IMG/VR virus record: IMGVR_UViG_3300049215_000529
Coordinates: 62,001-126,000 of that record
Reading direction: 5' to 3' (one strand)
DNA: 64,000 nucleotides
Made by a program: the position numbers and the translations under genes. Shown here piece by piece: positions 7,705-58,064 of this stretch; the first letter of the stretch is position 1, and each line of letters begins with the position of its first letter. Under the pieces are notes generated by a model. The model was not told where the DNA came from and made no database searches. It worked only from the letters and a program-made list of their open reading frames with translations.

Positions 7705-9021
7705 TTAACCTTTGTTAAAGTATTTGTCCGTGTTAATAGCGTTACCGCTATTTAATATATTTTTATCTTTTACTAAGCGATTAAGTGCATTATCTATATC
7801 TTTTAATGTCGGTGCCTTGCGATTATGAGCCAAAGCCTCGAACATAGATGAGATATACAGCTCTTTCAAATAGGCATAAGAAAACTCATACATCTCTGCA
7901 TACTTAGCAAGCTCTTTACATTTCTTGTTGTCAATGAGATTGCCAAACCATCTCTTTAGATATATATAAGCCATTTTTTGATTTGGTAAGGGAATTTCAA
8001 ATTTTCTATCAAATCGGGATGGTCGTTGGGTAATATTGGCGGTTAGCTTTTTAACTTCATTTGCCGTAGCAATCACCAATAGACCGTTTTTTGTCGAAAT
8101 GCCGTCCATCAAATTTAAGAAGGTTGATTTATCCACTCCCCTCTCAAACAGAGAATCTAGGTCTTCAAAGTACAATAAAGACGGACTTTGTTCTTCGGCA
8201 TATGAAAACGCCTCACGAACCGAGTTGTCATCGGCACCAGGTTCAATTGTAACTGGCTTGAAATTATACTCAGAGATAATGGTGCGAATAATAGAGGTCT
8301 TACCATTACCTGGCTTACCATACAATAGCACGCCACGCTTCCATGGAATCTTCTTTTCCAGATAAAAATCCTTGGATGCCAAGAAATTCTCAACTAAACT
8401 CTTCAAATCATTTTTGATATCGTCGGGCAAGAACATTTGATCCCAAGTAACATCTTTAGTATACGGAATATCATCTCCATCTACTACATGAATGTTAAGA
8501 TTGCTTCTGTCTCTTTGTTGAACCCACTCATCGAACTTATTGCGAAAAACGATATAGTTCTCATAGTCTTTTTCGGACACAAGAACAAAAAAGCTAATCT
8601 CATCTTCATTCTGATTGCCCTTATGAAATAAGGCTGCATGAATAAAATTCACATTTTTTGATGTGATATGGAAAATTCCCTGAACAAAAAACTTTTCATA
8701 ATTGTTCTCAGACTTCCAAGAAATAATAGAGTCTTTCCAAAGACACTCTATCTTCACAGAGTTTTCTTCACAGAACTCTAGGAATTGTCCATCTATGATA
8801 ATTCTGTTATGAACTAACTTCAAAACCGGTTCTTTCAGAACGCCATTAGCAAAATTGTCTTTTGTCCAATTCATCAAGTCTATGAAATTTGCTGGCGGTC
8901 TTGCAGTAATTAAACTAGCAGGACTACATGATGGAGTAAGCGCCTTTAAACGCGATAAAGATAAATGCTCTTGTCTCTCCATATCAACCGGGGTCAAATA
9001 GTCTTTGTTTTTATCTACCAT
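7705..9021 (-). CDS. AAA+ ATPase (Bcs1-like core)
   Basis: KRGVLLYGKPGNGKTS, YFEDLD, ATAN, RPSRFD. Confidence 0.88.
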   Translation of the reverse strand: MVDKNKDYLTPVDMERQEHLSLSRLKALTPSCSPASLITARPPANFIDLMNWTKDNFANGVLKEPVLKLVHNRIIIDGQFLEFCEENSVKIECLWKDSIISWKSENNYEKFFVQGIFHITSKNVNFIHAALFHKGNQNEDEISFFVLVSEKDYENYIVFRNKFDEWVQQRDRSNLNIHVVDGDDIPYTKDVTWDQMFLPDDIKNDLKSLVENFLASKDFYLEKKIPWKRGVLLYGKPGNGKTSIIRTIISEYNFKPVTIEPGADDNSVREAFSYAEEQSPSLLYFEDLDSLFERGVDKSTFLNLMDGISTKNGLLVIATANEVKKLTANITQRPSRFDRKFEIPLPNQKMAYIYLKRWFGNLIDNKKCKELAKYAEMYEFSYAYLKELYISSMFEALAHNRKAPTLKDIDNALNRLVKDKNILNSGNAINTDKYFNKG

Positions 9022-9052: not shown

Positions 9053-10834
9053 TTATGCGGCTTTTGTCACTGGTTTAGTATTACGACATTTGGGATATGC
9101 AGAACAAGCTAAAAATTTCTCTTTGCTTTCCTTGGCTTCTCTGACTGCCATCGGGCTTCCACATTTATCACAAAGCGTTCCACCATAACCTACATATGCC
9201 TTGTTTAATTCCTGTTTGAATTCTGGATAAAACTTTTTTAGCATATCGACATGATTAACTTTTCCAGCCTCTATTTCATCTAATTGCTGTTCCATTTTGG
9301 CTGTGTAATTATAGTCCATGAATGTAAAATATTGAGCCAGCACATCAGTAATCTTTTTGCCCAAATCGGTGGCATGAAAAACATTACCCTTCTTCTCAAC
9401 ATAATTGCGAGCAGTAATTTTGCTCAATAACTCAGCATAGGTTGCTGGACGACCAATGTTTTTATTAACCAGCTCTTTGATGAGTTTGTCTTCGGAGTAA
9501 CGTGCAGGTGGTTGAGTTTGTTTCTTTTCCACTCTAACAGGCGGCTTTCCAAGTACAGTAAGCGCATCACCCACATTGAGAGATGGAATTTCAATCTTAC
9601 TTTCTTCCACGCTGCCTAAAATCTCCATGAATCCAAGGCTTCTAAGAGCTTTGCCAGAGGCTTTAACTTCAGCTGATTTATCGTCCTTAACATGAGCAGT
9701 TACCTTTAATGTATCATATACTGCAGGCATCATTTGACTGGCAACAAAACATTTCCAAATAGTTTCATAAACCAGTTTCTCATCTGGGTCGATGATGGCA
9801 TAGTTGGCATTGGGCAACAATGTTAGGTCAGATGGACGAATACACTCATGTGCATCTTGTGCCGCATCTTTGTTCTTGTAAGAATTTGCTTTCTTTGGAA
9901 CTGCATGATTATTTGCAACAAGCCATTGTCTGACTTCTGATAATGCCTCATCACCAACTCGAACAGAATCGGTTCTAATATAAGTACAATAACCAGATTC
10001 ATAAAGAGCCTGAGCTGCCTTCATCGTACGATCAGCACTAAATCCATGTTGCTTAGACATAAGGCGTTGCAAAGTAGAAGTTACTAGAGGGGCTTGCGGA
10101 GCCCTCTTCTCTTCCTCTGCCAAAACCTCTGAAACAACATAATCTTTATGGTTAAGAGAGGTTGTTACATAATTGGCTCTTTTTTGGTCTGTAACTTTCC
10201 CTGGATATTTAGCTTCAAAACTGTCGGCGCCATTAGATAGTTCTACGTGAATAGTCCAATAATCTTCCGGAACAAATGCTTCAATTTCCCTTTCGCGATC
10301 AATGACCATACGAGTAACTACTGACTGAACACGCCCAGCTGATAGCTTGGGTCCGAAAAAATTCATTAGGAAAGGGGAGGCAGTAAATCCGACGAGACGA
10401 TCCAAAATTCTTCTTGCTTCCTGCGAGTGAAAGAGATTCATGTCGATATCGCGAACCTCTTTAGCGGCTTTTTGTAGTTTAGCCTTTTTGATTTCGTTGA
10501 ACACCATTCTTTTGATTGGTTTGCCGGTATCTGCTAGGCGTTCTGCTAGGTGCCAAGCAATAGCCTCGCCTTCTCTATCAGGGTCGCTTGCTACAAAGAT
10601 TTGATCAACCTTCTTAGCAGCTGCCAACAAACTATCCATTATGTCAAGTCTATCGTCCATCAAAACATATCGTGGTTTGAAATTATTGTCGATATCTACT
10701 CCCAAACCAAAGGGACCGCCCTTAGCCAAATCTGTGATGTGACCTTTACTTGCCATCACGATAAAATCTTTACCCAAATACTCTTGAATCTTTTGACCCT
10801 TAGCAGGGGATTCGACTATCACTAATGTTTTCAT
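9053..10834 (-). CDS. topA: DNA topoisomerase I (type IA) with one C-terminal zinc ribbon
   Basis: LVIVESPAK, SDPDREGEAI, SAGRVQS, TYIRTDS catalytic Tyr, GRPATYA, CDKCG...CSAYPKC. Confidence 0.95.
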   Translation of the reverse strand: MKTLVIVESPAKGQKIQEYLGKDFIVMASKGHITDLAKGGPFGLGVDIDNNFKPRYVLMDDRLDIMDSLLAAAKKVDQIFVASDPDREGEAIAWHLAERLADTGKPIKRMVFNEIKKAKLQKAAKEVRDIDMNLFHSQEARRILDRLVGFTASPFLMNFFGPKLSAGRVQSVVTRMVIDREREIEAFVPEDYWTIHVELSNGADSFEAKYPGKVTDQKRANYVTTSLNHKDYVVSEVLAEEEKRAPQAPLVTSTLQRLMSKQHGFSADRTMKAAQALYESGYCTYIRTDSVRVGDEALSEVRQWLVANNHAVPKKANSYKNKDAAQDAHECIRPSDLTLLPNANYAIIDPDEKLVYETIWKCFVASQMMPAVYDTLKVTAHVKDDKSAEVKASGKALRSLGFMEILGSVEESKIEIPSLNVGDALTVLGKPPVRVEKKQTQPPARYSEDKLIKELVNKNIGRPATYAELLSKITARNYVEKKGNVFHATDLGKKITDVLAQYFTFMDYNYTAKMEQQLDEIEAGKVNHVDMLKKFYPEFKQELNKAYVGYGGTLCDKCGSPMAVREAKESKEKFLACSAYPKCRNTKPVTKAA

Positions 10835-10872
10835 TCAGTCACCAATGTCTTTCAATATTTCTGTATTTATAA

Positions 10873-11325
10873 ATGGATACTCTTCACGGAAACATCACAA
10901 ATTTTTTTGAAGAACTTCTAACGGATTTGGATTGCCAATGCGACACCAAAGCATACATTGTTAGTATTTATGGAAAATATAAATCGGCGGAGTTCGATCT
11001 ATCTAAAGATAGTGTCACTTTACTATTTGCGCAAGCCCGATACAATCAAGATTTTTTAACCTATCAAAATTTAGGAGATTGGATATTTTTCTCCAATACT
11101 CTCGCGCCTGAGCATCTTAAATTTGCTAGCAAAGATTATTACGATACAGTAGCCAGGTTGTCCTATTATTCTTGCTACAAATTAATCAATAAACAATGGA
11201 AACTATTTGAAGAGTTATCTGATAACTTTTTGACTCTAGAGTCACAAGTCAAACGCAAATTAAGCGCAATACACCTCAGTAATCAAACTTGTGAGGGTAT
11301 CTATATCGAGCCTTTCTTTGACTAA
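10873..11325 (+). CDS. hypothetical protein
   Basis: 150-aa ORF divergent from topA. Confidence 0.65.
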   Translation: MDTLHGNITNFFEELLTDLDCQCDTKAYIVSIYGKYKSAEFDLSKDSVTLLFAQARYNQDFLTYQNLGDWIFFSNTLAPEHLKFASKDYYDTVARLSYYSCYKLINKQWKLFEELSDNFLTLESQVKRKLSAIHLSNQTCEGIYIEPFFD

Positions 11326-11761
11326 TCTCGGGACGGCGCCTACTACCTTTATTATTGAAAGCCCAGGCAGTCAAACCACACGGACACCATAATGTTTCCT
11401 TGCATTCGCTCTTTTCGTACAATCTACTTCTAAAAGCATGAGAGCTTAAACTTTTATAGCTTGGAGAGTGTTTAAACATAGCTAAACTATTAAATGCAGA
11501 TGGATTAGTATCTAAATAGAAATCATAGCATATCTTTTTATAGACCTTCTTAACAATATTAAAATGCTTACGAACTATGGAATGATCTCTAATGGGATTA
11601 GGACCTTTTTCAACAGAATATTCTGTTGGACCAGATTGACAATATTTACATCTGGCTCTAGCCATGAAAGAGGATGATAAATTAATGTAGATAATTTCAG
11701 GGGTGTACGTAGAGATTTTTTTAGCTTTACTCATCTTTACTGTTTTCCAACAAAATTGCAC
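11276..11761 (-). CDS. hypothetical protein with CxxC/CxC motifs
   Basis: CKYC, WCPCG; start uncertain. Confidence 0.55.
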   Translation of the reverse strand: MQFCWKTVKMSKAKKISTYTPEIIYINLSSSFMARARCKYCQSGPTEYSVEKGPNPIRDHSIVRKHFNIVKKVYKKICYDFYLDTNPSAFNSLAMFKHSPSYKSLSSHAFRSRLYEKSECKETLWCPCGLTAWAFNNKGSRRRPEISQRKARYRYPHKFDY

Positions 11762-13100
11762 GATCTACAATTTTCTTACGAACTCGATTAATGTAAACCA
11801 TACCTCCCATTTGGTAATGAGGGGGTACTCTTAAATGAGTAACTATTACTTTAGTTCCAGGAGTTATGTCTTTTATCTTAATAAGAGAGAAAGTATATTC
11901 TGATACAAGATCAATAATTGGTTCTTTATTGTCTTTTCTAACAACACTCAGAAGCTTACCAATATAATATGGTTTGGTTACCTTAGCTTTTCTGCCACCA
12001 ATATAAAATTCTTGAGTATTATTTTTGATAGTTAATCTTTCATTAACTACTCCATCAAATACACTAATTCCTCCAAATAAAGAAAGATTCTCATCTAACA
12101 GAGATTCCACTTTGTGAAGTTTGTTATGTTTCTTAAATGTGAAGGGAAGAGACTCTTCGAGCAACCTAATATATTCTTGAAATATTTTATGTTGAAATCC
12201 GCCAGAGCGACTTTTATTCAAAAGATAATCTACCATCTCAGTTGGATATTTTGTCAGCAAATTGTCAAAAGCTTGGTAGGCTAAACACTTGTGCTTGACA
12301 GTAAAATCCGAGCTACTGTAGGGAACATTGTTGCTTTGATAGTCTATGACCTCTCGTACTAATGCAACTTTATTTTCTAGCGCTTCACGAATCTCTAACT
12401 GATCTTGGGCGTTCATAACAGCATCTGGCACGTCACCCTTCAAACCCGAACCATTCTTGATGGGCGCGTCCAGTGTAAGAAGTTCTACGTTGCTCTGTGA
12501 GCTTGGATGATGCATTCTTCCAAGACTAGACCATTGTCCAACGAAACAACAATCGAAATAGGGACATGCTACTATTGGAGAGTCATCCAAAGGATGCGGA
12601 ATAAATCTATCGCAATCTTCACAGTGATAACCGTTCTTATTGTGTTTAAAAAAGGTCCTGAAAAAAGCAATCTTTTTTGGATCTATTGTTTGCCTTAACT
12701 CATCCTCGCACTCTTCGCACTTGAAAACTTTGTTAATGATAGTAACCAAATTTTCCTTCTTCAAAAATAAACAGCCGGGACATAGATATTCTGTCTTTTT
12801 CTTGAGCTGAGGGACTGCCTTCTTTTTACAGTAGTCGTTGACGATGTAGAAAAGATATGAGTTAAGACCCTCTAAATCATCATTCTTATTGATGAAGGTC
12901 ACGCTCCCAGTTCTCAACACATCCATCAATTCTGCAACCAAAGCACGAACAGATAGCGGATCGCTGTTATGGAAGAACACACGATGTACAGTGGCAATGC
13001 CACTAGCGTGCTCCCGTAAAAAAGCATCGACAAGAGCATCCACCTCTAACAAATTGTTGGGACGTGATTCTAAAGACATTATTTTCCGAAGTATGAACAC
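11727..13100 (-). CDS. hypothetical protein with Cys-rich central region
   Basis: 457-aa ORF; CPGC, CEEC, CEDC, CPYFDCC. Confidence 0.75.
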   Translation of the reverse strand: MFILRKIMSLESRPNNLLEVDALVDAFLREHASGIATVHRVFFHNSDPLSVRALVAELMDVLRTGSVTFINKNDDLEGLNSYLFYIVNDYCKKKAVPQLKKKTEYLCPGCLFLKKENLVTIINKVFKCEECEDELRQTIDPKKIAFFRTFFKHNKNGYHCEDCDRFIPHPLDDSPIVACPYFDCCFVGQWSSLGRMHHPSSQSNVELLTLDAPIKNGSGLKGDVPDAVMNAQDQLEIREALENKVALVREVIDYQSNNVPYSSSDFTVKHKCLAYQAFDNLLTKYPTEMVDYLLNKSRSGGFQHKIFQEYIRLLEESLPFTFKKHNKLHKVESLLDENLSLFGGISVFDGVVNERLTIKNNTQEFYIGGRKAKVTKPYYIGKLLSVVRKDNKEPIIDLVSEYTFSLIKIKDITPGTKVIVTHLRVPPHYQMGGMVYINRVRKKIVDRAILLENSKDE

Positions 13101-14065
13101 ACTTCTTGTGGAGTAATATATGCCACCTGGAATCGCTCTAGATATCTTGAATTATCTCGGATCAGTGCATCGCCTTTTCCTAGCAAATTTTCTGCTCCGC
13201 TGGAGTCTAAAATTACTTTCGAATCGACGTGACTTGCCACACGACACGCAATACGTGCCGGGAAATTGGCTTTAATAGTGCCGTTGATAATATTTACGGA
13301 TGGTCTTTGAGTTGCAAGCACCAAATGAATGCGAGCGGCGCGACACTTCTGTGCTAAACGACATAGCGCAATGTAAAACTCATCCTCTTTATCTTGCATG
13401 ATGAGATCGGCAAATTCATCGATCATCACGACTATTGGCTTGAGGCTAGTAGCTGGCGCACCTGCACGAAGCCTGTCATATCGATCTTCCATTACTTCTA
13501 GAAGATTGTTAAGTAGGTGCAAAGCGTCATCATACGTATAAAGTACTGGAACACCAAGTTTAGTTTCGTACTCTGCAAATTCGATTCTCTTTGGGTCCAC
13601 TAAATGAAGATCAACATCATTATAATTAAACAAGTTAGCAATTATATTGTGGAGTAGTGTGCTCTTACCGGAGCCAGTTGTGCCAGCTACCAACATATGC
13701 GGATTCTGTGCCAAATCCATCCACATGCAACGTCCATCAACAGTTTGACCTAACAAACAGTTTATCTCTCCCTTGGGAAGATGCTTGTTGGTAAAACCAT
13801 CCAATAATTTGAGTGCCTCTGTGCGTGGCGACGCGAATTCCAAACGAACCACGCCCTCATTATGCAGCACTTTTACACTCGGTTTGCATGGCGTTTTCAA
13901 TGCCAGCGAAATCTCGTCGCTATACTTTTGAATGTCCTTCACTCGGGCGTGAGGATTCAACTTCAAATCGTAGTAGAAATAGCTGTCAACTTTGCTATGA
14001 TTGACGCAAGAAGCTTTGATATTAAAAGACTGGAGAATGTTATTAAATTCTTGAATGAGTTCCAT
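13079..14065 (-). CDS. FtsK/SpoIIIE-family ATPase (motor domain only)
   Basis: PHMLVAGTTGSGKS, DPKRIE, VMIDEFADL, GIHLVLATQRPS-like, AENLLGKGD; no TM or gamma domain. Confidence 0.9.
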   Translation of the reverse strand: MELIQEFNNILQSFNIKASCVNHSKVDSYFYYDLKLNPHARVKDIQKYSDEISLALKTPCKPSVKVLHNEGVVRLEFASPRTEALKLLDGFTNKHLPKGEINCLLGQTVDGRCMWMDLAQNPHMLVAGTTGSGKSTLLHNIIANLFNYNDVDLHLVDPKRIEFAEYETKLGVPVLYTYDDALHLLNNLLEVMEDRYDRLRAGAPATSLKPIVVMIDEFADLIMQDKEDEFYIALCRLAQKCRAARIHLVLATQRPSVNIINGTIKANFPARIACRVASHVDSKVILDSSGAENLLGKGDALIRDNSRYLERFQVAYITPQEVCSYFGK

Positions 14066-14110
14066 CTTGATGACTCTATTGTAATCACGAAAATTTGAGG
14101 GGCAAGGGGC

Positions 14111-14518
14111 TCAAATTTTTACAATTCTGTGGTATTTTTCGGCAATAATCTTTTTTAATTCTTCTTCCGTAGGCTTTACCAAACCGACTCTATGTCCTAA
14201 TTTTATTCCAGAAGAATTGGCTGTTCCATAAGGAAGCTCAATAACCAAATCACTGAAATTATTATCACCAATTGCGGCAGTAGAATAAGGTTCACCTTTG
14301 CAAATTTGCTTGACAATACCCTTCAAACAGAAAACAATATCCAATGGACTCGGAGTATTTTTCATCCAAAATTTATTAATGCGAGCATGTGAATAAATAA
14401 ATGACATAACTGGAGGTGGCCAATCCTGTTCCATTAATCCTTGTGTTTGTTCATCCTCTGAAATCGCAAGAAGAGTTGGAAACACATTGTTATGAATATA
14501 TATGTATCCTTCTTCCAT
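14111..14518 (-). CDS. DUF192 family protein
   Basis: QGLM...FWMKNTPSPLDIVF...VIELPYG. Confidence 0.8.
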   Translation of the reverse strand: MEEGYIYIHNNVFPTLLAISEDEQTQGLMEQDWPPPVMSFIYSHARINKFWMKNTPSPLDIVFCLKGIVKQICKGEPYSTAAIGDNNFSDLVIELPYGTANSSGIKLGHRVGLVKPTEEELKKIIAEKYHRIVKI

Positions 14519-16060
14519 TTAAACTCCAGAATGCTGCAAGGCGCGGGTCATTCCTCTAAGGGAAGTTATTTCTTTATTAACGCTTTTAATTAGTGGATCT
14601 AACTGATCAACATCCATGCCCTTCTCAAGCAAATCCATAATTTGATCTAAACTCTTTCTTATCTCGCCAGCCATCTTATAAATGTCTAGGCGGTAAGAAG
14701 AAGTTGAATCAAACAAGCTAAGTTGGTGCATAGTTTTACCATACCACTTTTTCAAGAAGTCTTGAGCTACTTTGTTTAATTCAGCTGAAGCTGTCTTAGG
14801 TGGTTCTGGTGTTGCTACAGGTGGTGTCACCACTGCTGGTGGAGTGGATGGAACTGGTGCTACCTTAGGTGGAACTGCTTTCACTTTTGCTTTAGCTTTT
14901 TGTTGAGTAGCAATTTCTTTTAAAGAAAGACCAGAGGTACCAAGTTCCGAATTTAATTGGGAAACCAAATGACCATACGTTGTACTCATCTGATTGACTA
15001 TGTTACTCTTATTTTGTTTTGGAGATGTTTTAAATGAATCAATCAAATTTCCAAGCTCCATTAGCTCGGGTGGACCTATTCCAAAATATAATGGAGCATA
15101 GGCTTTATAATCAGATATTATTCTTTTTGCGCTGTCGGCATCCAGGCTTTCTAATAAAACATTAGGAATAGTAGATGATGGCTCAGGTGGCGCTGATGGT
15201 TCTTCATCTCTTGGCGAGCCTGGATCCTTAAGCTCATCAGAAGGCTCAGCTAATGGATTAGAGTAATGCTCACGCTCTTCTCTTTTTTCTTTTGCCTTTT
15301 CATCATCCAACTCAGCTTCTAATTCAGGAGGTAATGCAATCTCTCCACCAGGATCTGCAACTTGTGCTGGCATGCTGCTCTTGTAGATAGTAAATCCTCT
15401 TGCAACTAGAACCCAACTATTCCAAGCCTCATTTAGTTTTTTGAAAGCGGCTGGAATACTAGACTTAGAAGATTTTACAACTTCCACTTGAAGTTTCCCC
15501 AAATCTTTATAGGTACGAGCACAGGCATTAAGCATAGCCATTCTTGCACGACGAACTCTTGCTGCCTCACTAGTTCCCATAGTAGGGGTTAATAGTTTAG
15601 TGAAAAATCTGGAAACGGGATTAGAGCCCTGTGCCACCAATTGATATTTAGTTTCCCAGGCTGCTAATTGTTTAGTTAAATCAGGCGTACCAGGGGCTGG
15701 GGGTGTTGGAGCAGGGGTTGCAGGACCAGCTTCAGGAGCAAGAGCTGCAGGAGCTTTAGGTTGCTTCTTGCGACGAGTTTTAGAATACTCTAATTGTTCA
15801 GCAACTAATGAATTACCACGCTGAGCAATATCTTGAAAATCCGCTGCTAATGATCCAATAATAGTTCCTGGATCTGCAGGCATTGCTTCACCAATACGAG
15901 ATCTTTCTTTGAAAAACTTAGATGGCCAACCATTCATTAGCTTCTTTAAATGGATCAAATCATTAACAAAGGCGGATACATCCTTGTTCCATAGCGCTTT
16001 GTTTTGTCTGAGTTTCTCCTGAGCTGGGTCAGCAGACGGCTTTCTGGCAGTCTTTTCCAT
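14519..16060 (-). CDS. large Pro/Ala-rich hypothetical protein, possibly virion-associated
   Basis: 513 aa; KTA/KVAQ motifs, PAPTPP tracts. Confidence 0.7.
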   Translation of the reverse strand: MEKTARKPSADPAQEKLRQNKALWNKDVSAFVNDLIHLKKLMNGWPSKFFKERSRIGEAMPADPGTIIGSLAADFQDIAQRGNSLVAEQLEYSKTRRKKQPKAPAALAPEAGPATPAPTPPAPGTPDLTKQLAAWETKYQLVAQGSNPVSRFFTKLLTPTMGTSEAARVRRARMAMLNACARTYKDLGKLQVEVVKSSKSSIPAAFKKLNEAWNSWVLVARGFTIYKSSMPAQVADPGGEIALPPELEAELDDEKAKEKREEREHYSNPLAEPSDELKDPGSPRDEEPSAPPEPSSTIPNVLLESLDADSAKRIISDYKAYAPLYFGIGPPELMELGNLIDSFKTSPKQNKSNIVNQMSTTYGHLVSQLNSELGTSGLSLKEIATQQKAKAKVKAVPPKVAPVPSTPPAVVTPPVATPEPPKTASAELNKVAQDFLKKWYGKTMHQLSLFDSTSSYRLDIYKMAGEIRKSLDQIMDLLEKGMDVDQLDPLIKSVNKEITSLRGMTRALQHSGV

Positions 16061-16110
16061 ATCATAGATGAAGTTTTATTGATATTCCTTCTCTTTAGGA
16101 AGTAGAAACA

Positions 16111-16138
16111 ATAATGCCCTGTTTTACCAGGGCATTAT
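16111..16138 (-). terminator. intrinsic terminator-like hairpin after clpP
   Basis: ATAATGCCCTG-N6-CAGGGCATTAT, 11-bp stem. Confidence 0.55.
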
Positions 16139-16161
16139 CGACTCCACAACAAAACTGCAAG

Positions 16162-16752
16162 TTAAGGTACAATATGGTCAACGATTCCGTATTCTAGCGC
16201 CTGTTTGGCGTCTAACCAGACATCATGGAGGCAATCTGCCTTGATTTTTTCCAAGGACTGTCCCGTATGTTGTGCCAGGATTTTCATTATGTTATCGTTG
16301 TTTTCTTTAAGAAAATCGTAATAGTTCTTGGTATTTATAACGTCATGCCCAGGTAATGGGAAGCCGCATTGAATTCCATGAATCATAATATTGGCGTTTC
16401 GGAAAGCATAGCGCTGTCCTTTGGTGCCAGCAGCCAATATAACAGCTCCAGCAGAGTAACATTTGCCAATGCAAATAGTTTTAACGGGCGCCCTAATCAT
16501 TTGCATTACATCGATGATGTTTGCTAAACCTGCAGCATCGCCACCATCCGAATGAATATACAACTCAATCATGGATTCATGATCTTCGTGATCATAATAC
16601 AATAGGAGGGCTGATAGTTGGGCAGCAGATTCTTTAGTAACTATCTCCGACATAAAAATAACGCGATCCTTAGCTAGTCTAATATAAGTTTCCTCATATC
16701 CCATCATCGGACGCATAGCATGTTCATGATCGTGATTGCTTTTCTTGTTCAT
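16162..16752 (-). CDS. clpP: ClpP protease subunit, catalytic triad present
   Basis: YIHSDGG, GKCYSAG (Ser), IMIHG (His), HDVWL (Asp). Confidence 0.9.
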   Translation of the reverse strand: MNKKSNHDHEHAMRPMMGYEETYIRLAKDRVIFMSEIVTKESAAQLSALLLYYDHEDHESMIELYIHSDGGDAAGLANIIDVMQMIRAPVKTICIGKCYSAGAVILAAGTKGQRYAFRNANIMIHGIQCGFPLPGHDVINTKNYYDFLKENNDNIMKILAQHTGQSLEKIKADCLHDVWLDAKQALEYGIVDHIVP

Positions 16753-16761
16753 GAGTTTACC

Positions 16762-17346
16762 TTACTTAGCCGATCCTACAACATGATCAATTAACCCATA
16801 TTTCACAGCTTCAGAAGCATTCATAAACACTCTTCTATCAAAATCTTCCGAAACTTGCTTATAGGTTTTCTTAGTGCTCTTAGCAAAAATATCCATCATT
16901 TTTTTGTTGTCAGCGGTTACTTTTTCTAAAGCTTTTTTCGCGTCGGTCATGTCAGAAAATGATGCCCAATTAGTTACTAGCTGACTTACTGCAATGACAG
17001 AATTTTTCGTAGCTAGTCTCATGCCAGGAGTTCCCGCCGCCAAAATAATTGCGGCTTCATCCATAGCGGATCCAATGCAAACAGTCTCTATTGGAGATTC
17101 AATCATTTTCATCATATCATAAATCATTAAGACATTGCGAATATCGCCGCCATCAGAGTTAATAAATAATGTGATTTTTTTATCAGTATCCTCTGCATCT
17201 TTTAATAGCAACGTAGCCACAATATCAGTTGCCAATTTATCATCGATATTATTACAGATGAATAATATTCGATCATTAGATAGCTTCTGATAAATGTCCA
17301 CGGGCATTTCACCGTGCTCGGTCGATTCAAGTAGAATGGTATTCAA
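16762..17346 (-). CDS. ClpP-family subunit lacking catalytic Ser and His (ClpR-like)
   Basis: DIYQKLSNDRILF, FINSDGG; GSAMDEAA replaces GxAASM; IAVSQ replaces MIHQ. Confidence 0.85.
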   Translation of the reverse strand: MNTILLESTEHGEMPVDIYQKLSNDRILFICNNIDDKLATDIVATLLLKDAEDTDKKITLFINSDGGDIRNVLMIYDMMKMIESPIETVCIGSAMDEAAIILAAGTPGMRLATKNSVIAVSQLVTNWASFSDMTDAKKALEKVTADNKKMMDIFAKSTKKTYKQVSEDFDRRVFMNASEAVKYGLIDHVVGSAK

Positions 17347-17349
17347 AAT

Positions 17350-17700
17350 TTAGAATCTCTTTCTTTGTTTATCCTCTGCCTCACGCTCTTCAGCGCAACC
17401 AACACAGGTTAAAAAATGTGGATTAATCAGCAATCGTTTTTCCGGAATCTGTTCTCCGCAATCTTGGCACAAACCATAAGAAGAATCTTCGATTCTTTTT
17501 AAAGCGTCTTCGATTTGTGTTAACTTTGCACTATTACGTGTATTAAGTTGATTGTGTAAATCAATTAAAATGTGAGCTTGAATTTCGTCAGTTTCATCTC
17601 CATCTGTGTCTATATCGTGACCCTGTGTAGACTGACCAATTAGCTCGTCTCTTTGAGCAAGCAATTTTTCTTTAGTTTTCTTCAAGAAAGCTTTTTTCAT
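17350..17700 (-). CDS. DksA/TraR C4 zinc-finger protein
   Basis: DETD tip, IEDALKRIEDSSYGLCQDCGEQIPEKRL...CVGC. Confidence 0.9.
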   Translation of the reverse strand: MKKAFLKKTKEKLLAQRDELIGQSTQGHDIDTDGDETDEIQAHILIDLHNQLNTRNSAKLTQIEDALKRIEDSSYGLCQDCGEQIPEKRLLINPHFLTCVGCAEEREAEDKQRKRF

Positions 17701-18086
17701 TATATGAACCTCAAGTCGGAAACGGGAACTGTAATAGTTCCCTTGGGAGCGGGCATCTTTTTGTCATCTACCCTTTTGATAAAGACTAAATATGCCTGGT
17801 TTTCCGGCTCTTTCAATATGAACGCGTTAACCGTCCAATCATCATAGATAGCCTTTTTAGTCTCGTTAGAAAATTTAAGATTCCTCGTGTTCTCAATTAC
17901 TTGAGCCCTCTTTTTGTAAAACGGACCCATCACTTCTTTGGGTTGCATTAGAAAAGTTTCAGTAAATATGTTTGATGCTTCCTCGGGCGACGCAGCAGGA
18001 ATTACTTTAGTTAATAATTCTCCGACGCTTCCGAGACCTGCACAAACGAACACGGTGGGGCGGGCGCCTTTTCTACTCATAATCAT
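17700..18086 (-). CDS. hypothetical protein
   Basis: 128-aa ORF, stop/start overlaps with neighbours. Confidence 0.65.
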   Translation of the reverse strand: MIMSRKGARPTVFVCAGLGSVGELLTKVIPAASPEEASNIFTETFLMQPKEVMGPFYKKRAQVIENTRNLKFSNETKKAIYDDWTVNAFILKEPENQAYLVFIKRVDDKKMPAPKGTITVPVSDLRFI

Positions 18087-18408
18087 TCCTCAAAGTTTTG
18101 TCAATGTCTAGATATTCACACAGCTTTTTGCGAAGAGGCGGCGTCAATTTGAATCTTAAAATTCTATAACCTTTAGATAGTACCATCTCTTTACGAACCA
18201 CGTCATGATATAAACGAGGTTTTGTATTCTTAAGTTCTAGAATTCCAAAATTAAATATCTTAATTGGCTTACCACTTTTTAAATCTTTAACTATCTCTTC
18301 AAACAAAATGTCGATTATACTAGCCACGTGATAATGATGAACAAATCTATTTATCTTTTTATTAATGTAACGCCAAAATACTCGACGATTAATGCTGTCA
18401 GGAATCAT
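18073..18408 (-). CDS. HU/IHF-family DNA-binding protein
   Basis: GKPIKIFNFGILELKNTKPR...RFKLTPPLRK. Confidence 0.75.
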   Translation of the reverse strand: MIPDSINRRVFWRYINKKINRFVHHYHVASIIDILFEEIVKDLKSGKPIKIFNFGILELKNTKPRLYHDVVRKEMVLSKGYRILRFKLTPPLRKKLCEYLDIDKTLRNDYE

Positions 18409-18869
18409 TACTTCTCCTGAAATACAAAATTCAAATAATCGTCAAATGCTTCCCCACGCAATAAACAACTACCCATTTTAGTAATAATTTTAAGTTCGAG
18501 TAGTTGTTTAATACAAAATACGATATCTTGATTAGAAAACTTACTATGTAACCAGCTTATATCCATATTTGTCGTTTTAAGATTGTTGCAAATTTCTTTG
18601 CAGATATTAGGGTATTGTATCTTAAAAAATTCTAATGCCTTAATCTCTTTGGAAGAGATAACTTTGGCTGATTCATCAAAAGTACTTATTACATCAAGAA
18701 GTTTAGATCTAACTAGTTTTAGATTTTCTACTTCTTTAATTTTATTATCAATTACAGATATTCTGTTCTTAGCTTCGGATACAATTTCTTCGGCAGTGAA
18801 TTTATTGTTTCCAACACACTCAGCAATAAACTTACTAAGAAATTCGGGGTCTTTTTTCTTACCGCGCAT
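18408..18869 (-). CDS. hypothetical protein
   Basis: 153-aa ORF in coupled run. Confidence 0.65.
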   Translation of the reverse strand: MRGKKKDPEFLSKFIAECVGNNKFTAEEIVSEAKNRISVIDNKIKEVENLKLVRSKLLDVISTFDESAKVISSKEIKALEFFKIQYPNICKEICNNLKTTNMDISWLHSKFSNQDIVFCIKQLLELKIITKMGSCLLRGEAFDDYLNFVFQEK

Positions 18870-19428
18870 CGTCGTCCCTGTAAACTAAATCATGATATCT
18901 AATAAAAGAAAGTAATGCACTATGCTGATCTTTATAATTCGAACACTTGCTCCAAGTCAATCCAACATCCCTAACTTGCTCCATGGCTGCTAGGAAGGTT
19001 GCTTGCAAAAAAGTATTGCATTCCATCCAGTCTTTTCCATTAAGTGAACACGCTATCATTGGTTCTGGATCAATAAATTCTGGTGGCTCAATTTGGGTTG
19101 CAGGATCAAATTGTTCTTGTCCAACCAAGTATAAACCATAGAATGGTAAATTTTTCAACTGAATCACCATTGCCATCTCTGGTAAATTTTTTGTAAGGGA
19201 ACAATCTCCTAACAATACTTTAAGTTCTTGTGTATCAGCCGATAATTGACATCCCCAAATACTATTTTGAGAATCTTCACCTTCTGATTCAAATGTTAAT
19301 TTGTCAGACAAAAGATACTCATTTCTCATTAAAGATTTGCTTTTATTAAAATCTACGTAAAGAGAAGGATATACTGCAAAATTAGAAAAGATATGTTTAA
19401 CTATTTCTTCCAATAGAACACGATTCAT
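18859..19428 (-). CDS. hypothetical protein
   Basis: 189-aa ORF in coupled run. Confidence 0.65.
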   Translation of the reverse strand: MNRVLLEEIVKHIFSNFAVYPSLYVDFNKSKSLMRNEYLLSDKLTFESEGEDSQNSIWGCQLSADTQELKVLLGDCSLTKNLPEMAMVIQLKNLPFYGLYLVGQEQFDPATQIEPPEFIDPEPMIACSLNGKDWMECNTFLQATFLAAMEQVRDVGLTWSKCSNYKDQHSALLSFIRYHDLVYRDDDAR

Positions 19429-19748
19429 TTGTTCAACTTTCTACCGATAGCTTGTTGTAACGCTTCTCGGATGTCAAATACTCCGAAGTTGAGCTTAGGC
19501 AGATCATTGTATGAATTATCAATGTATGTTTCATAATTAAAAACATCACCAGCCAAGCGTCGTTTTGCTAACTCTTCCATACACATGACTGCAATTTCTC
19601 GGTAACAACCAAAATATCTGTCACATACAATCATTTCACATAATTTTTCTGAAGAATAAGATGGTACGTTCTTGCGGACTAATTCTAAATCTAAAGTAGT
19701 CGCCTCAATTTCTTCAGTTGGAAATTCAAATAAATCTTTATCACTCAT
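19425..19748 (-). CDS. hypothetical protein
   Basis: 107-aa ORF, ATGA overlap. Confidence 0.65.
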   Translation of the reverse strand: MSDKDLFEFPTEEIEATTLDLELVRKNVPSYSSEKLCEMIVCDRYFGCYREIAVMCMEELAKRRLAGDVFNYETYIDNSYNDLPKLNFGVFDIREALQQAIGRKLNK

Positions 19749-20088
19749 GGTGCCTCATCGGGGGCGGTGTAGAAACTTTCACTTTTAAAGACGGTAATAT
19801 ATGACCGCCCTTGCGATAGTCAAAGAAATGTAATTTCGTATCAAAAAATAAGTTATTGAAATTCAGAACTTTTCCCAGAATCAACAAATCCCTCATGCTT
19901 TGAAAAACTGCCGTAATTACCTGAGCTACTTCTGCTTTGGAAATTAAAGGATATCTAGCATAAACACGATTAACTAAATCTTCATTGTATTGAAGATTGA
20001 TAGGACTATCTGAATTGAGTTGATCTACCATCTCTTGATGAGATCGATCTTTAAAGAAAAACGGTTTAACTGTCTTAGGCTTCTTCAT
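19741..20088 (-). CDS. second, divergent HU/IHF-like protein
   Basis: ISKAEVAQVITAVFQSMRDLLILGKVLNFNNL helix pattern; start set at MKKPK (track 20130). Confidence 0.55.
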   Translation of the reverse strand: MKKPKTVKPFFFKDRSHQEMVDQLNSDSPINLQYNEDLVNRVYARYPLISKAEVAQVITAVFQSMRDLLILGKVLNFNNLFFDTKLHFFDYRKGGHILPSLKVKVSTPPPMRHHE

Positions 20089-20134
20089 GGTTCCGTAATA
20101 TATAACTACTCCCCCTATAAGATCCCCCATTCAT

Positions 20135-27920: not shown

Positions 27921-28277
27921 TGGTGGAGATGTAGGGTACTGCCCCCTAGTCCGCGATATGCCCTTATCAAAACTCGTTCACAAACTTAGTCAATATCAAC
28001 GTCATTGACAACGTTGCTAGATTGTCGCTCTAGCGGGTTATTTACTGTTTATTTCAAATCCACAATCCGTAGCCGAATGTGGACTCTATCTTTAGTGGGT
28101 TGAATGTCCTTTGATTACCAAAGCTATCTCATCTGGGACATATCATCATGCGGCTAGCGCAAATGATTCAAATGCATTATCGTTTGCATTTATACGTCGA
28201 TTACTTTTGGAGGGGCAATCATCCTCTGTTTGCGTCATTCTGATAATTCGTTATCCCGTCGAATCTATGTCATCCCC
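27921..28277 (-). ncRNA. ssrA: tmRNA, complete; tag ANDNAFESFALAA
   Basis: GGGGATG/CATCTCC-A-CCA with G3:U70, TTCGAC, pk1, tag 28187-28149 then TGATGA, T arm TAGGG-GGCAGTA-CCCTA. Confidence 0.93.
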
Positions 28278-28451
28278 ATTTTTAGTTTTAAGCCATTCTA
28301 TTAAGTCAACAAAGAAATCAGAAACCTTCTGTGCAGCTTCTTTCTCTTCTAAGCCTAACCCATATTTTTTATCCTGCAACCAATAAGATAGTTGAGGCGA
28401 GCCAGGACATTTAGGAAATTTCTGTCTACGAAAACTCTGATACTCTTCCAT
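28251..28451 (-). CDS. hypothetical protein between the two tmRNAs
   Basis: 66-aa ORF; last 9 codons lie inside the tmRNA 5' end. Confidence 0.5.
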   Translation of the reverse strand: MEEYQSFRRQKFPKCPGSPQLSYWLQDKKYGLGLEEKEAAQKVSDFFVDLIEWLKTKNGDDIDSTG

Positions 28452-28466
28452 GAGATCAATCGAGAT

Positions 28467-28746
28467 ACTTAGTCATTGGCAACAAAGACAGATAATCGCT
28501 CCATCGAGCTATCTACTGTTAATCTTATTATCATACATCGTAGCCCTATATGATAACCAGCTTTGTGGGTTGACGTTCTTTTGATTACTCAAGCAGTCTT
28601 ATCTCAGAACGTATGGGCCTTACTCAGGCAGCCATAGCATATGCATTATCGTTTGCATTTATTACGTTGATTACTTTGGTAGGTGTAATCGCCTCTGTCT
28701 GAATCATTTTGTCAATTCTTTACCACGTCGAAACCCGTGCATGCCC
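28467..28746 (-). ncRNA. ssrA: second tmRNA, 3'-truncated; tag ANDNAYAMAA
   Basis: GGGCATG..TTTCGACG, intact pk1, tag 28656-28627; colinear with the complete copy up to GACTAAGT, then no T arm or acceptor end. Confidence 0.85.
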
Positions 28747-28754
28747 TTAAATAA

Positions 28755-28773
28755 AACCCGCATTGTGCGGGTT
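28755..28773 (-). terminator. hairpin plus U-rich tail after tRNA-Thr(CGT)
   Basis: AACCCGCA-CAA-TGCGGGTT-TTATTT. Confidence 0.55.
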
Positions 28774-28847
28774 GGAGCTGATGATCGGTACTGCCCCGAT
28801 GCTATCTCGTTACGAGTGAGATGTTCTGCTATTTAAACTACATCAGC
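28773..28847 (-). tRNA. tRNA-Thr(CGT) with non-canonical GGCAGTA T-loop
   Basis: GCTGATG/CATCAGC-T-CCA, loop CT-CGT-AA, T arm ATCGG-GGCAGTA-CCGAT. Confidence 0.85.
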
Positions 28848-29653: not shown

Positions 29654-29728
29654 TGGAGCTGGTGCCGAGAATCGAACTCGGGTCTCTGCGTTACAAGGGC
29701 AGGGTCTTACCATTAGGACGAAACCAGC
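29654..29728 (-). tRNA. tRNA-Thr(TGT)
   Basis: GCTGGTT/CACCAGC-T-CCA (one mismatch), loop CT-TGT-AA, CCGAG-TTCGATT-CTCGG. Confidence 0.88.
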
Positions 29729-57074: not shown

Positions 57075-58064
57075 TCAAAAATTACCGGGCGCCACTTGGA
57101 AGCAAGTCAAGCCCTTTTCACGCCAGAACTGGACAACAGAATTTCGATCGTCTAATACGCAAAGCACATTATACTTACCTTCGATTTGACCTTGGTAAAT
57201 CTCTTCCTTGATGATGGCGTCCTTACGGAAATCATCAGTCTTGCGCATGAAGAGTTGGTATGGGATTGGTGCTGTGACCATTTCTGCACCCAATACATCT
57301 GGATTGCTTGCCCACTTATCATACTCATATGTGCAGTGCTTTTCAATAAAGCGAATTGTCTCTGGTCGATATTTATCTTCACGCCCGGAGCAGAAAATGA
57401 TCTTTCGACCTGCTGCATGGTGAGCTTTAATGGTCTCGATAACTGGAACATTTGGAAGATCCTTAATATCACAGTCAGAGGCATCGTATGGGCTTCGACC
57501 ATGAATCAAAGCTAGCGTACCATCCAAGTCACAGATGATCGCTTCTGGAGCGCCCAGTACATGAGCAGGAGCTTCCACTGCAACATTGTTGCCTCTGTGT
57601 TCAGTAAAGATTTCTACACGTGGGTGATAGAACTTGAACTGCTTTCCGCCCGAGTCCTTCCACCATTTGCGAATTACTTCTTCCCCGACCTTAGCCTTAC
57701 CTTCACGCTTTGAATCGCGAGCGATTGCTTCATCCAATTCAATGTAAAAAGCCTTCTCGAACACTTGAATGTCAGAGTTGACCGACTTAGCGATCTTGCA
57801 AACATCATCGAAGTGACGACGATTAAGATTTAGGTTGTCGATAACAACGTTCTTACCACGCTTGAGAGCGTCTCGGATCAAATAGTTACGAGCATCCGTA
57901 ATCATCTTTTCATAGTCCGCTGACCAGACAGATCCATTCATCATAGCACGAAGGTCGTCATTGTTGACGCGAACCCAGTTGTTTGGATCTTTGGAAACTA
58001 ATTGCTTTGCATACGTGGACTTTCCTGAAGCAGGCAATCCCACCAACATTTCTACTCTAATCAT
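57075..58064 (-). CDS. pseT: polynucleotide 5'-kinase/3'-phosphatase (T4 PseT-like)
   Basis: GLPASGKST, VNNDDLR, IDNLN, DLDGT, SGR, DDR. Confidence 0.92.
   Translation of the reverse strand: MIRVEMLVGLPASGKSTYAKQLVSKDPNNWVRVNNDDLRAMMNGSVWSADYEKMITDARNYLIRDALKRGKNVVIDNLNLNRRHFDDVCKIAKSVNSDIQVFEKAFYIELDEAIARDSKREGKAKVGEEVIRKWWKDSGGKQFKFYHPRVEIFTEHRGNNVAVEAPAHVLGAPEAIICDLDGTLALIHGRSPYDASDCDIKDLPNVPVIETIKAHHAAGRKIIFCSGREDKYRPETIRFIEKHCTYEYDKWASNPDVLGAEMVTAPIPYQLFMRKTDDFRKDAIIKEEIYQGQIEGKYNVLCVLDDRNSVVQFWREKGLTCFQVAPGNF

What the first reader, a model, noticed from the sequence alone, without database searches (positions are those of the whole stretch)
16162..17346. Adjacent active ClpP and inactive ClpR-like subunit
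Seen: first gene in the operon has Ser-to-Asp and His-to-Ser changes; second has the full triad. Established: ClpP/ClpR hetero-oligomers are known from cyanobacteria and plastids. Inference: a self-contained hetero-complex or a modifier of host ClpP; both tmRNA tags end in the AA degron typical of ClpXP substrates.
Basis: partly seen in the sequence, partly recalled or inferred. Interest (0 to 1): 0.6.

Follow-up and report, generated by a model that had tools for sequence, protein, structure and literature searches.

The report
Huge-phage ClpP pair, one copy inactive
A huge phage from a moss metagenome carries two adjacent ClpP protease genes: one keeps its active site, and the other lost it long ago yet is strictly conserved, a phage-grown counterpart of the cyanobacterial and plastid ClpP/ClpR pair.

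Summary
On the minus strand, gene A (17346..16762, 194 aa, TTG start) and gene B (16752..16162, 196 aa) are both full-length ClpP-family proteins.

- **Active sites:** A has lost all three catalytic residues (Ser to Asp, His to Ser, Asp to Arg). B keeps Ser-His-Asp.
- **Conservation:** no triad residue appears at its own position in 121 close A homologues, and none in 27 related huge-phage loci. The roughly 33 nearest full-length clusters, down to 38% identity, all lack a complete triad. B's triad is invariant in its 121 homologues. Both genes are under purifying selection, and A is the more conserved.
- **Gene order:** HU, p128, DksA-like, A, B, p513, DUF192, FtsK is fixed across contigs of up to 480 kb.
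- **Origin:** in trees, triad-less A-like proteins form one clade (100/99) next to the B lineage. Related phages have a single active ClpP at the same spot. This points to a duplication within the phage lineage and one loss of the triad. A is not a relative of cyanobacterial ClpR.
- **Partners:** no ClpX, ClpA/C-type ATPase, ClpS or SspB was found, even in a 97%-complete relative.

Best reading (inferred): A and B form a mixed ClpP barrel that uses a host unfoldase. Assembly remains untested, because the complex prediction gave no verdict. I found no paper describing this.

The parts
16762..17346 (-). Gene A: a ClpP paralogue with no catalytic triad ('ClpR-like'), 194 aa, TTG start. Asp96, Ser121 and Arg172 replace Ser, His and Asp. 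The N-terminal gating hairpin is canonical and there is no propeptide.
   Evidence: PF00574, 175.6 bits. PDB and E. coli alignments. AlphaFold2 pLDDT 88.8 with an N-terminal hairpin. Best PDB fold match is M. tuberculosis ClpP2, TM 0.92 over 191 residues. Residues 2-13 are conserved in 119 or more of 121 homologues, which supports the TTG start.
16162..16752 (-). Gene B: a divergent but catalytically competent ClpP, 196 aa, with Ser100, His125 and Asp177. It has a His-rich N-terminal extension that is predicted to be disordered.
   Evidence: PF00574, 160.8 bits. The triad is invariant in 121 homologues. AlphaFold2 pLDDT 82.3, with residues 1-14 below 50.
17350..17700 (-). A DksA/TraR-type C4 zinc-finger gene. 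It ends 3 nt before gene A and sits immediately upstream of the ClpP gene or genes in nearly all relatives examined, both single-ClpP and paired (one single-ClpP locus, L158, showed no such hit).
   Evidence: PF01258, 45.4 bits. phrog_54. Synteny.
16109..16140 (-). A terminator-like hairpin (13-bp stem followed by a T-rich tail) 22 nt after the stop of gene B. It is the likely 3' end of the operon.
   Evidence: Consensus scan and the sequence itself. This is a pattern match only.

Best explanation
Genes A and B are ancient paralogues of a phage ClpP.

**Shown**
- B keeps the Ser-His-Asp site.
- A lost all three residues once, early in the lineage, yet keeps the whole ClpP fold, including the canonical N-terminal gating hairpin and the Glu/Asp-Arg pair next to the former catalytic Asp.
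- A is held under stronger purifying selection than B.
- The two genes are adjacent, with gaps from 12 nt down to a 4-nt overlap. Wherever an A-type gene was examined, a ClpP-family gene follows it directly: a full-length active B in the 27 IMG/VR loci and other long contigs, a cut-off B-like fragment on two short contigs, and one short contig where the next gene could not be read.

**Inferred**
- The two proteins co-assemble into one 14-subunit ClpP-type chamber in which only B cuts. A acts as a non-catalytic structural or docking subunit.
- The arrangement is either an A ring stacked on a B ring, as in mycobacterial ClpP1P2, or mixed rings, as in cyanobacterial ClpP3/R.
- Because the phage encodes no Clp ATPase or adaptor, the chamber is probably driven by a host unfoldase (ClpX, ClpA or ClpC), which would redirect host-powered proteolysis during infection.
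- Phage tmRNAs whose tags end in LAA, MAA or QAA could supply substrates. This last step is the weakest inference.
For: - **Family and fold:**
- **Triad loss in A is universal:** no catalytic Ser, His or Asp at its own position among 121 homologues or in 27 IMG/VR loci. B's Ser and His are invariant; its Asp is Asp in all 121 homologues and Asp or Glu in the 27 loci.
- **Selection:** dN/dS is about 0.14 for A and 0.19 for B, and A is the more conserved in 279 of 345 genome pairs.
- **Synteny:** all 27 IMG/VR loci and further contigs of up to 480 kb share the order p128, DksA, A, B, p513.
- **Distant A-types:** a library-wide search shows that the roughly 33 nearest full-length clusters (38-68% identity) all lack a complete triad. 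Distant A-types still follow DksA and precede a B-type gene.
- **Tree:** in the careful tree the A-like clade has support 100/99 and is sister to B proper at 100/84.
- **Single-copy relatives:** phages with one ClpP at the same position all have an active one.
- **No phage partners:** no ClpX, ClpA/C-type ATPase, ClpS or SspB.
- **N-terminus and pocket:** A's N-terminal hairpin is nearly invariant and the apical pocket is mostly hydrophobic in both proteins.
- **Transcription hint:** contigs from moss RNA libraries with no differences from the window cover parts of B, A and the DksA-like gene.
- **tmRNA:** a tmRNA with a tag ending in AA lies 8-13 kb from the pair in 4 of 4 genomes.
Against: - There is no direct evidence that A binds B. 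The complex prediction was below the mark and counts neither way.
- A is as far from B (33-36% identity) as from bacterial ClpPs (33-40%). Sequence distance therefore does not favour B over a host ClpP as its partner.
- Pocket residue Tyr60 is replaced in both proteins, and Leu114 is Thr in A, so docking of a host IGF-type loop is uncertain.
- The host is unknown.
- The substituted triad positions vary among distant A-types, so no new chemistry is indicated at that site.
- Contigs from RNA libraries cannot exclude carried-over DNA.
- No other head-maturation protease was detected in these genomes, so a role in the virion is not excluded.
Confidence: 0.6

Rival explanations
1. Decoy or poison subunit. 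A acts against the host rather than with B. It would form inactive rings, or mix into host ClpP rings, and so sequester host ClpX/ClpA or blunt host ClpP. That would protect phage proteins from host proteolysis. B would work on its own.
For: A keeps the canonical N-terminal gating hairpin and a largely hydrophobic docking pocket. A is as similar to bacterial ClpPs as it is to B. The phage has no unfoldase of its own.
Against: A-type genes were never seen without an adjacent B-type gene. The two are each other's nearest relatives and their genes are tightly coupled. A pure inhibitor would not need a linked active paralogue across this much divergence. A family with conserved surfaces argues against tracking many different host ClpPs.
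Confidence: 0.15
2. Virion or prohead protease. The pair processes capsid or scaffold proteins during head maturation, or is packaged into the virion, as ClpP-fold head-maturation proteases are in many phages.
For: Both proteins hit PHROG 'head maturation protease' families (E 1e-14 to 1e-25). No S77, S78 or other ClpP-related head protease was found in the 97%-complete relative. [quoted passage not shown]
Against: Scores against cellular ClpP models are about three times higher (178 and 160 bits) than against the ClpP-related head-maturation model (57.9 and 59.6 bits, cut-off 120). Neither protein has a scaffold or capsid fusion or extension. The neighbours are nucleoid and replication-type genes (HU, DksA, FtsK, topoisomerase), not structural genes. 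The S77 control search matched none of the control genomes, so that negative result is uninformative.
Confidence: 0.1
3. Functionless relic. A is a decaying duplicate of B with no role.
For: The triad is lost, and the replacement residues vary among distant relatives.
Against: The reading frame is intact in every locus. dN/dS is about 0.14, and A is more conserved than the active copy. There are 43 invariant columns across 76 sequences. The family persists down to 38% identity.
Confidence: 0.02

Closest known systems
Cyanobacterial ClpP3/ClpR, the plastid ClpPR core and apicoplast ClpP/ClpR
   Same: An active ClpP coexists with a ClpP paralogue that lacks the catalytic triad, keeps the ClpP fold and is retained by selection. 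In those systems the inactive subunit is part of the proteolytic core (review PMC7966870).
   Different: The origin is independent. A scores 110 bits against NF009204, the model I take to be the cyanobacterial ClpR type (cut-off 263), and branches beside its own neighbour's lineage. It is encoded by a phage, as a two-gene tandem, and no cognate ClpC or ClpX is encoded alongside. Its stoichiometry and ring arrangement are unknown.
Two-ring bacterial ClpP1P2 cores (Mycobacterium tuberculosis, Listeria, Pseudomonas, Streptomyces)
   Same: Two ClpP paralogues are often encoded in tandem and form a heterotetradecamer in which the unfoldase docks on one ring only (established knowledge). A's predicted fold matches M. 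tuberculosis ClpP2, the docking ring, best (TM 0.92).
   Different: In those systems both paralogues keep a triad (Listeria ClpP1 has Asn in place of Asp). Here one paralogue has lost all three residues. These proteins are only 33-40% identical to cellular ClpPs, and both score below the bacterial ClpP equivalog cut-off.
Single ClpP genes of jumbo phages (for example phage G ClpP with ClpX, and ClpP of group 1 and 2.2 jumbo phages)
   Same: These are phage-encoded ClpP-family serine proteases thought to act on host or phage proteins (PMC7824862; PMC12484599). Relatives of this phage with a single active ClpP in the same gene block exist.
   Different: Here the gene is duplicated and one copy is dead, and there is no phage ClpX. 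No GenBank phage record holds an A-type protein above 40% identity.
ClpP-related phage head-maturation proteases (NCBIfam NF045542; PHROG 94, 1684 and others)
   Same: The fold superfamily is the same, and both proteins hit these profiles weakly.
   Different: The scores are far below the cut-off (58 and 60 bits against 120). The full cellular-type architecture is present, with gating hairpin and handle helix. There is no scaffold or capsid context.

Membership tests
ClpP family (Pfam PF00574, MEROPS S14 fold) | Full-length match to the CLP_protease profile above the gathering score | tested here: met
   A scores 175.6 bits over profile positions 3-180 of 182. B scores 160.8 bits over 8-179 of 182. 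The cut-off is 20.2.
ClpP family (Pfam PF00574, MEROPS S14 fold) | ClpP three-dimensional fold with the N-terminal hairpin and handle helix | tested here: met
   A model: pLDDT 88.8, strands 3-8 and 11-16, helix 132-157. Foldseek finds ClpP chains at TM 0.90-0.93 over 186-192 alignment columns. B model: pLDDT 82.3, same core, N-terminus disordered. B was not searched against the PDB by fold.
Catalytically active ClpP | Ser-His-Asp triad at the canonical positions | tested here: not met
   Not met for A, which has Asp96, Ser121 and Arg172. It is also absent in every close A homologue. B meets this feature with Ser100, His125 and Asp177.
Bacterial ClpP equivalog (NCBIfam TIGR00493) | Score at or above the curated cut-off of 308.6 bits | tested here: not met
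   A scores 146.5 bits and B 139.6 bits. Both are only 33-44% identical to cellular ClpPs, which are 57-81% identical to the E. coli protein.
Cyanobacterial/plastid ClpR lineage (NCBIfam NF009204, which I take to be the cyanobacterial ClpR-type model) | Score at or above the curated cut-off of 263 bits, that is, common descent with ClpR | tested here: not met
   A scores 110 bits and B 96 bits. The model passes its cut-off in only 1 of 14 control genomes; the tool does not say which one. None of 10 incomplete-triad cluster representatives outside the A-like clade passed it either. No named ClpR sequence could be placed in the tree.
ClpR as a functional class (non-catalytic ClpP paralogue in a ClpP core) | A paralogue without the triad that is conserved together with an active ClpP | tested here: met
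ClpR as a functional class (non-catalytic ClpP paralogue in a ClpP core) | Physical incorporation into a tetradecamer with the active subunit | tested here: inconclusive
   The complex prediction scored 0.24 against a mark of 0.32, which is no verdict. This needs biochemistry.
Complete Clp protease system (ClpXP, ClpAP or ClpCP) | A cognate AAA+ unfoldase encoded with the peptidase | tested here: not met
   TIGR00382 (ClpX) gave no match in G000-G003. AAA_2 gave only weak hits to unrelated ATPases. There is no ClpS or SspB. One relative is 97% complete; the window's own record is 47% complete.
ClpP-related phage head-maturation protease (NF045542) | Score at or above 120 bits, with structural-gene context | tested here: not met
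   A scores 57.9 bits and B 59.6 bits. The neighbours are DksA, HU, FtsK and topoisomerase genes.

The most novel reading that the evidence does not exclude
A widespread clade of huge phages (about 350-480 kb) has independently evolved its own ClpR. A dead ClpP ring would specialise as a docking and gating adaptor that captures the host's ClpX/ClpA-type motor and couples it to a phage-encoded catalytic ring. Together with phage tmRNAs whose tags end in LAA, MAA or QAA, this would give the phage control over which proteins are tagged and destroyed during infection. It would be a hybrid host-phage protease with a division of labour between rings.
Probability: 0.25. Interest if true: 0.75.

Novelty: new variant of a known kind. 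Interest (0 to 1): 0.58.

Why it matters
Catalytically dead ClpP subunits were known from cyanobacteria, plastids and apicoplasts, and what they contribute is still debated. Here the same solution has arisen independently in viruses.

The phage case offers three advantages:
- The evolutionary path is unusually readable. Related phages carry a single active ClpP at the same position in the gene block, while others carry the pair. The triad was lost once and the inactive copy has been kept ever since.
- It is a compact two-gene system without the multi-paralogue complexity of plastids. That makes it suitable for testing what a non-catalytic ClpP subunit does: assembly, gating, unfoldase docking or tuning of processivity.
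- It bears on how huge phages take over host protein turnover. They encode the peptidase and tmRNAs but not the motor or SmpB, which implies chimeric host-phage machines.

The family is abundant. More than 700 homologues of each protein score E <= 1e-10, and one B protein was seen on 76 contigs. Even so, it has no close relative (above 40% identity) among the GenBank phage records searched.

Tried and rejected
- **Complex prediction of A with B:** score 0.24 against a mark of 0.32, so no verdict. It is not used as evidence either way.
- **blastn of the pair against GenBank phages:** no match.
- **tblastn of A against GenBank phages:** only canonical ClpP-like hits at 39% identity or less. No deposited phage record there carries a close relative.
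- **ARAGORN:** it missed both tmRNA-like genes. Rfam found them.
- **Genome scan with a nine-sequence mixed alignment:** A two-sequence alignment worked but returned only canonical cellular ClpPs. It gave no A-type gene in a cellular genome and no cyanobacterial ClpR for the tree.
- **Naming a ClpR among incomplete-triad outliers of the library search:** none passed NF009204. The 'not ClpR' conclusion therefore rests on profile scores and on A's placement beside B, not on a named ClpR in the tree.
- **AU test:** a tree with all active B-like proteins as one clade excluding A is not rejected (p = 0.465). The order 'single copy first, then duplication' against 'old duplication, then loss of A in some lineages' is unresolved.
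- **Search for a T4-type prohead protease, S77:** the control matched none of the control genomes, so the negative result is uninformative.
- **The AAA+ genes in the window** (7705-9021, YjoB/VAT-like; 59139-60251): considered as phage unfoldases for the pair. I saw no ClpX/ClpA-type IGF-like docking loop and no C-terminal HbYX motif on reading the 438-aa sequence. Left as a lead.
- **The idea that Asp96 and Arg172 form a new salt bridge or a new catalytic site:** dropped, because both positions vary freely in distant A-types.

The costly library-wide protein search was used once. The claim of an independent origin with a single loss of the triad rested on what the nearest relatives outside the close family look like.

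Full report
**What is there.** The finding's coordinates coincide with two minus-strand ORFs.
- Gene A runs 17346..16762 (194 aa, TTG start).
- Gene B runs 16752..16162 (196 aa, ATG start), 9 nt downstream.
- A DksA/TraR-type zinc-finger gene (17700..17350) ends 3 nt before A.
- A 13-bp-stem terminator-like hairpin (16140..16109) follows B.
- Both proteins match Pfam CLP_protease end to end, at 175.6 and 160.8 bits against a cut-off of 20.2. Both match dozens of solved ClpPs at E 1e-28 to 1e-35.
- The window is bases 62001-126000 of a 204-kb IMG/VR virus record that CheckV rates 47% complete. The full genome is therefore probably above 400 kb.
- The DNA is held by moss metagenome runs.

**Check of the observation.** I aligned both proteins to solved ClpPs and to E. 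coli ClpP taken from NC_000913.3.
- A has Asp96 at the catalytic Ser, Ser121 at the His and Arg172 at the Asp.
- B has Ser100, His125 and Asp177.
- A is 33% identical to B. Each is 33-34% identical to E. coli ClpP.

**Is it conserved?** A word-index search found 764 A homologues and 715 B homologues at E <= 1e-10.
- In the best 120 of each, plus the window's own protein, A's three positions read D118/N2/A1, S91/N20/G10 and R109/K8/other. They are never Ser, His or Asp respectively.
- B's Ser, His and Asp are 121/121 each.
- In IMG/VR, 27 loci on contigs of up to 480 kb all carry p128, DksA, A, B and, in 26 of them, p513, in that order. The A-B spacing runs from a 4-nt overlap to a 12-nt gap.
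- In those loci A never has a triad residue. B always has Ser and His, and has Asp or, in about a third, Glu.
- Nei-Gojobori estimates give dN/dS of about 0.14 for A and 0.19 for B. Synonymous sites are largely saturated, so these figures are rough.
- A is the more conserved of the two in 279 of 345 genome pairs.
- The conserved block extends further: HU, p128, DksA, A, B, p513, DUF192, FtsK, p457 and on to topoisomerase I.

**How deep does the inactive lineage go?** The origin claim depends on what lies just outside the close family. I therefore ran the exhaustive library search once.
- Among the 150 best cluster representatives, 32 of the first 33 (38-68% identity to A) lack a complete triad. 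The one exception has Ser and His but Thr at the Asp position and falls outside the A-like clade. The replacement residues are very varied, and the Ser position is Ser in two of them.
- The first proteins with a complete triad appear only at about 36-40% identity.
- Distant A-types at 48% and 42% identity still sit directly after a DksA-like gene. Two A-types (48% and 39%) are followed by a fragment that is B-like.

**Phylogeny.**
- A quick tree of 183 sequences puts all 51 A-like proteins, every one triad-less, in one clade with SH-aLRT 99. It joins that clade to 30 active B-like proteins at 99.
- A careful tree of 95 sequences (LG+C20 PMSF, ultrafast bootstrap / SH-aLRT) gives A-like monophyly at 100/99. 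A-like is sister to the B lineage proper at 100/84. The whole A plus B-like group has 72/80.
- Three active B-like representatives outside the 'A-like plus B proper' group (P0322, P0383, P0289) each come from a contig with a single ClpP. In two of them that gene sits in the same HU ... ClpP, p513-like, DUF192 block, and a DksA-like gene directly precedes it in P0322 and P0289.
- P0279, which lies inside the B lineage proper, is the second gene of a pair.
- The simplest reading is a tandem duplication within this phage lineage, followed by one loss of the triad in the upstream copy. The branch to the A clade is long (0.47).
- An AU test does not reject the alternative in which all active B-likes form a clade excluding A (p = 0.465). 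The timing of the duplication relative to the single-copy lineages is therefore open.
- Both clades are long-branched, so some attraction cannot be ruled out.

**Not a cyanobacterial ClpR.**
- A scores 110 bits against NCBIfam NF009204 (cut-off 263). That model passes its cut-off in only one of the 14 control genomes, and I take it to be the cyanobacterial ClpR type.
- A scores higher against generic ClpP models, at 178 bits.
- None of ten incomplete-triad outliers from the library search passed that model either.
- A scan of 185,579 species genomes, seeded with motifs shared by A and E. coli ClpP, kept the 80 best of 588 confirmed ClpP loci. These were only 33-40% identical to A, and they are 57-81% identical to E. 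coli ClpP.
- GenBank phages hold nothing closer than 39%.
- I could not place a named ClpR in the tree, which is a gap.

**Structure-level reading.**
- The AlphaFold2 model of A (pLDDT 88.8) has the N-terminal beta-hairpin, the core and the long handle helix.
- Its best PDB matches are M. tuberculosis ClpP2 from the ClpP1P2 complex and S. aureus ClpP, at TM 0.90-0.93 over 186-192 alignment columns.
- A starts at the position of the mature E. coli N-terminus, so it has no propeptide. Residues 2-22 are almost invariant.
- This conservation also shows that the TTG start is right. The database's 181-aa gene call (P0001) is 13 residues short.
- B has a different N-terminus: conserved, His-rich (an H-x-H-E motif followed by P-L-x-G-Y) and predicted to be disordered.
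- At the positions I recall as forming the E. coli docking pocket, both proteins are mostly hydrophobic. Tyr60 is Thr in A and Glu or Thr in B, and Leu114 is Thr in A.
- A keeps the Glu/Asp-Arg pair next to the former catalytic Asp, and B does not.
- These features fit an A ring that gates and docks plus a B ring that cuts. They do not prove it, and mixed rings are equally possible.

**Partners.**
- Neither this record nor three relatives (97%, 83% and 79% complete) yielded ClpX, a ClpA/C-type AAA_2 protein above the cut-off, ClpS, SspB or SmpB.
- Each of the four genomes has exactly two ClpP-family genes.
- An unfoldase, if one is used, must therefore come from the host, whose identity is unknown.
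- A YjoB/VAT-like AAA+ protein at 7705-9021 is a phage-encoded candidate without any Clp-docking hallmark.

**tmRNA link.**
- Rfam finds a tmRNA at 27921-28277 (96 bits). It also finds a second tmRNA-like gene at about 28446-28826: 41 bits with the standard model and 46 bits with the permuted model, just under the gathering score.
- Read from the conserved resume context, the tags are ANDNAFESFALAA and ANDNAYAMAA.
- The three relatives each have a tmRNA 8-13 kb from the clp pair, with tags ANDNAFVPMAQAA (two of them) and ANDNAFAMAA.
C-terminal Ala-Ala tags are classic ClpX degrons (established for E. coli).
- A functional link to A and B remains an inference.

**Expression.** Contigs from moss and plant RNA libraries, with no differences from the window, cover 16147-16515 (B), 16951-17206 (A) and 17482-17632 (the DksA-like gene). 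Nothing was laid on the flanks. The four runs appear to be two data sets each filed twice. Contigs cannot exclude DNA carry-over and cannot show co-transcription.

**Interaction test.** The single complex prediction of A with B scored 0.24 and 0.20 against a mark of 0.32, which is no verdict.

**Literature.**
- Searches for ClpP with huge phages, for ClpR with phage, and for 'phage-encoded ClpP' found no description of a dead/active ClpP pair in phages.
- Jumbo-phage surveys mention single ClpP genes and, separately, ClpX, ClpA or ClpS (PMC7824862).
- Phage G has ClpP and ClpX, and both are present in its virions (PMC12484599).
- CLP_protease is listed among the common Pfam domains of the gut 'Jug' phages (PMC12880540).
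- The ClpR concept and the architecture of ClpPR cores are taken from PMC7966870.

**Verdict.** The ClpP/ClpR analogy holds at the level of logic but not of ancestry. The system lacks its own motor. Hetero-oligomer formation is well motivated by evolution but has not been demonstrated. I rate it a new variant of a known kind, of moderate to good interest.

Noticed in passing
window 27921-28277 (-) and about 28446-28826 (-): Two adjacent tmRNA-like genes. The first scores 96 bits with RF00023. The second scores 41 bits with RF00023 and 46 bits with the permuted model RF04321, just under the gathering score. The tags read ANDNAFESFALAA and ANDNAYAMAA. ARAGORN missed both. Relatives G001-G003 each have one tmRNA, 8-13 kb from the clp pair, with tags that also end in AA. 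No SmpB was found in any of the four genomes.
   Followed up: partly
window 17307-17346 (-): Gene A starts at a TTG. The database's own gene call for this protein (181 aa) starts 13 codons later at an ATG and cuts off the conserved N-terminal gating hairpin. In homologues these 13 residues are nearly invariant, and 82 of 121 homologues start with Met at the longer position.
   Followed up: yes
window 16701-16752 (-), the N-terminus of gene B: B carries a conserved His-rich N-terminal extension (an H-x-H-E motif followed by P-L-x-G-Y) in place of the canonical ClpP hairpin. It is predicted to be disordered (pLDDT below 50 for residues 1-14). It could be a propeptide, a metal-binding gate or a partner-binding tail.
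   Followed up: no
IMG/VR loci L031-L057: In about a third of the related loci the catalytic Asp of B is Glu, giving a Ser-His-Glu triad. The 120 closest homologues from the wider protein search all have Asp.
   Followed up: partly
window 7705-9021 (-): A 438-aa classic-clade AAA+ protein. Its best PDB sequence matches are archaeal VAT (a VCP-like ATPase) and B. subtilis YjoB. It is a possible phage-encoded unfoldase, but I saw no ClpP-docking loop or HbYX tail in its sequence. I did not check whether relatives conserve it.
   Followed up: partly
window about 9053-20130 (-): A deeply conserved core block of this phage clade: two HU/IHF-like genes, p128, DksA-like, ClpP(s), a Pro/Ala-rich 513-aa protein with no known family, DUF192, an FtsK/SpoIIIE-type ATPase, a 457-aa unknown and topoisomerase I. 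In one relative (L155) the p513 counterpart hits Xre_MbcA_ParS_C.
   Followed up: partly
window 28776-28847 (-) and 29657-29728 (-): Two extra tRNA-like genes found by Rfam (44 and 41 bits) that ARAGORN did not report. They lie beside tRNA-Thr(GGT) and the tmRNAs.
   Followed up: no
window 32106-34511 (+), 57075-58064 (-) and 62270-63424 (-): An 801-aa fusion of a methyltransferase, a GT2 and a GT6 glycosyltransferase. Also RNA-repair genes: a polynucleotide kinase-phosphatase (PNKP) and an RlaP-family nucleotidyltransferase.
   Followed up: no
window 15500-18500, runs X1-X14: The stretch is held in full by four moss metagenome runs, which are the likely source. Parts of it appear in moss and plant RNA-library assemblies. 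Small shares also occur in sediment, soil and groundwater metagenomes.
   Followed up: partly
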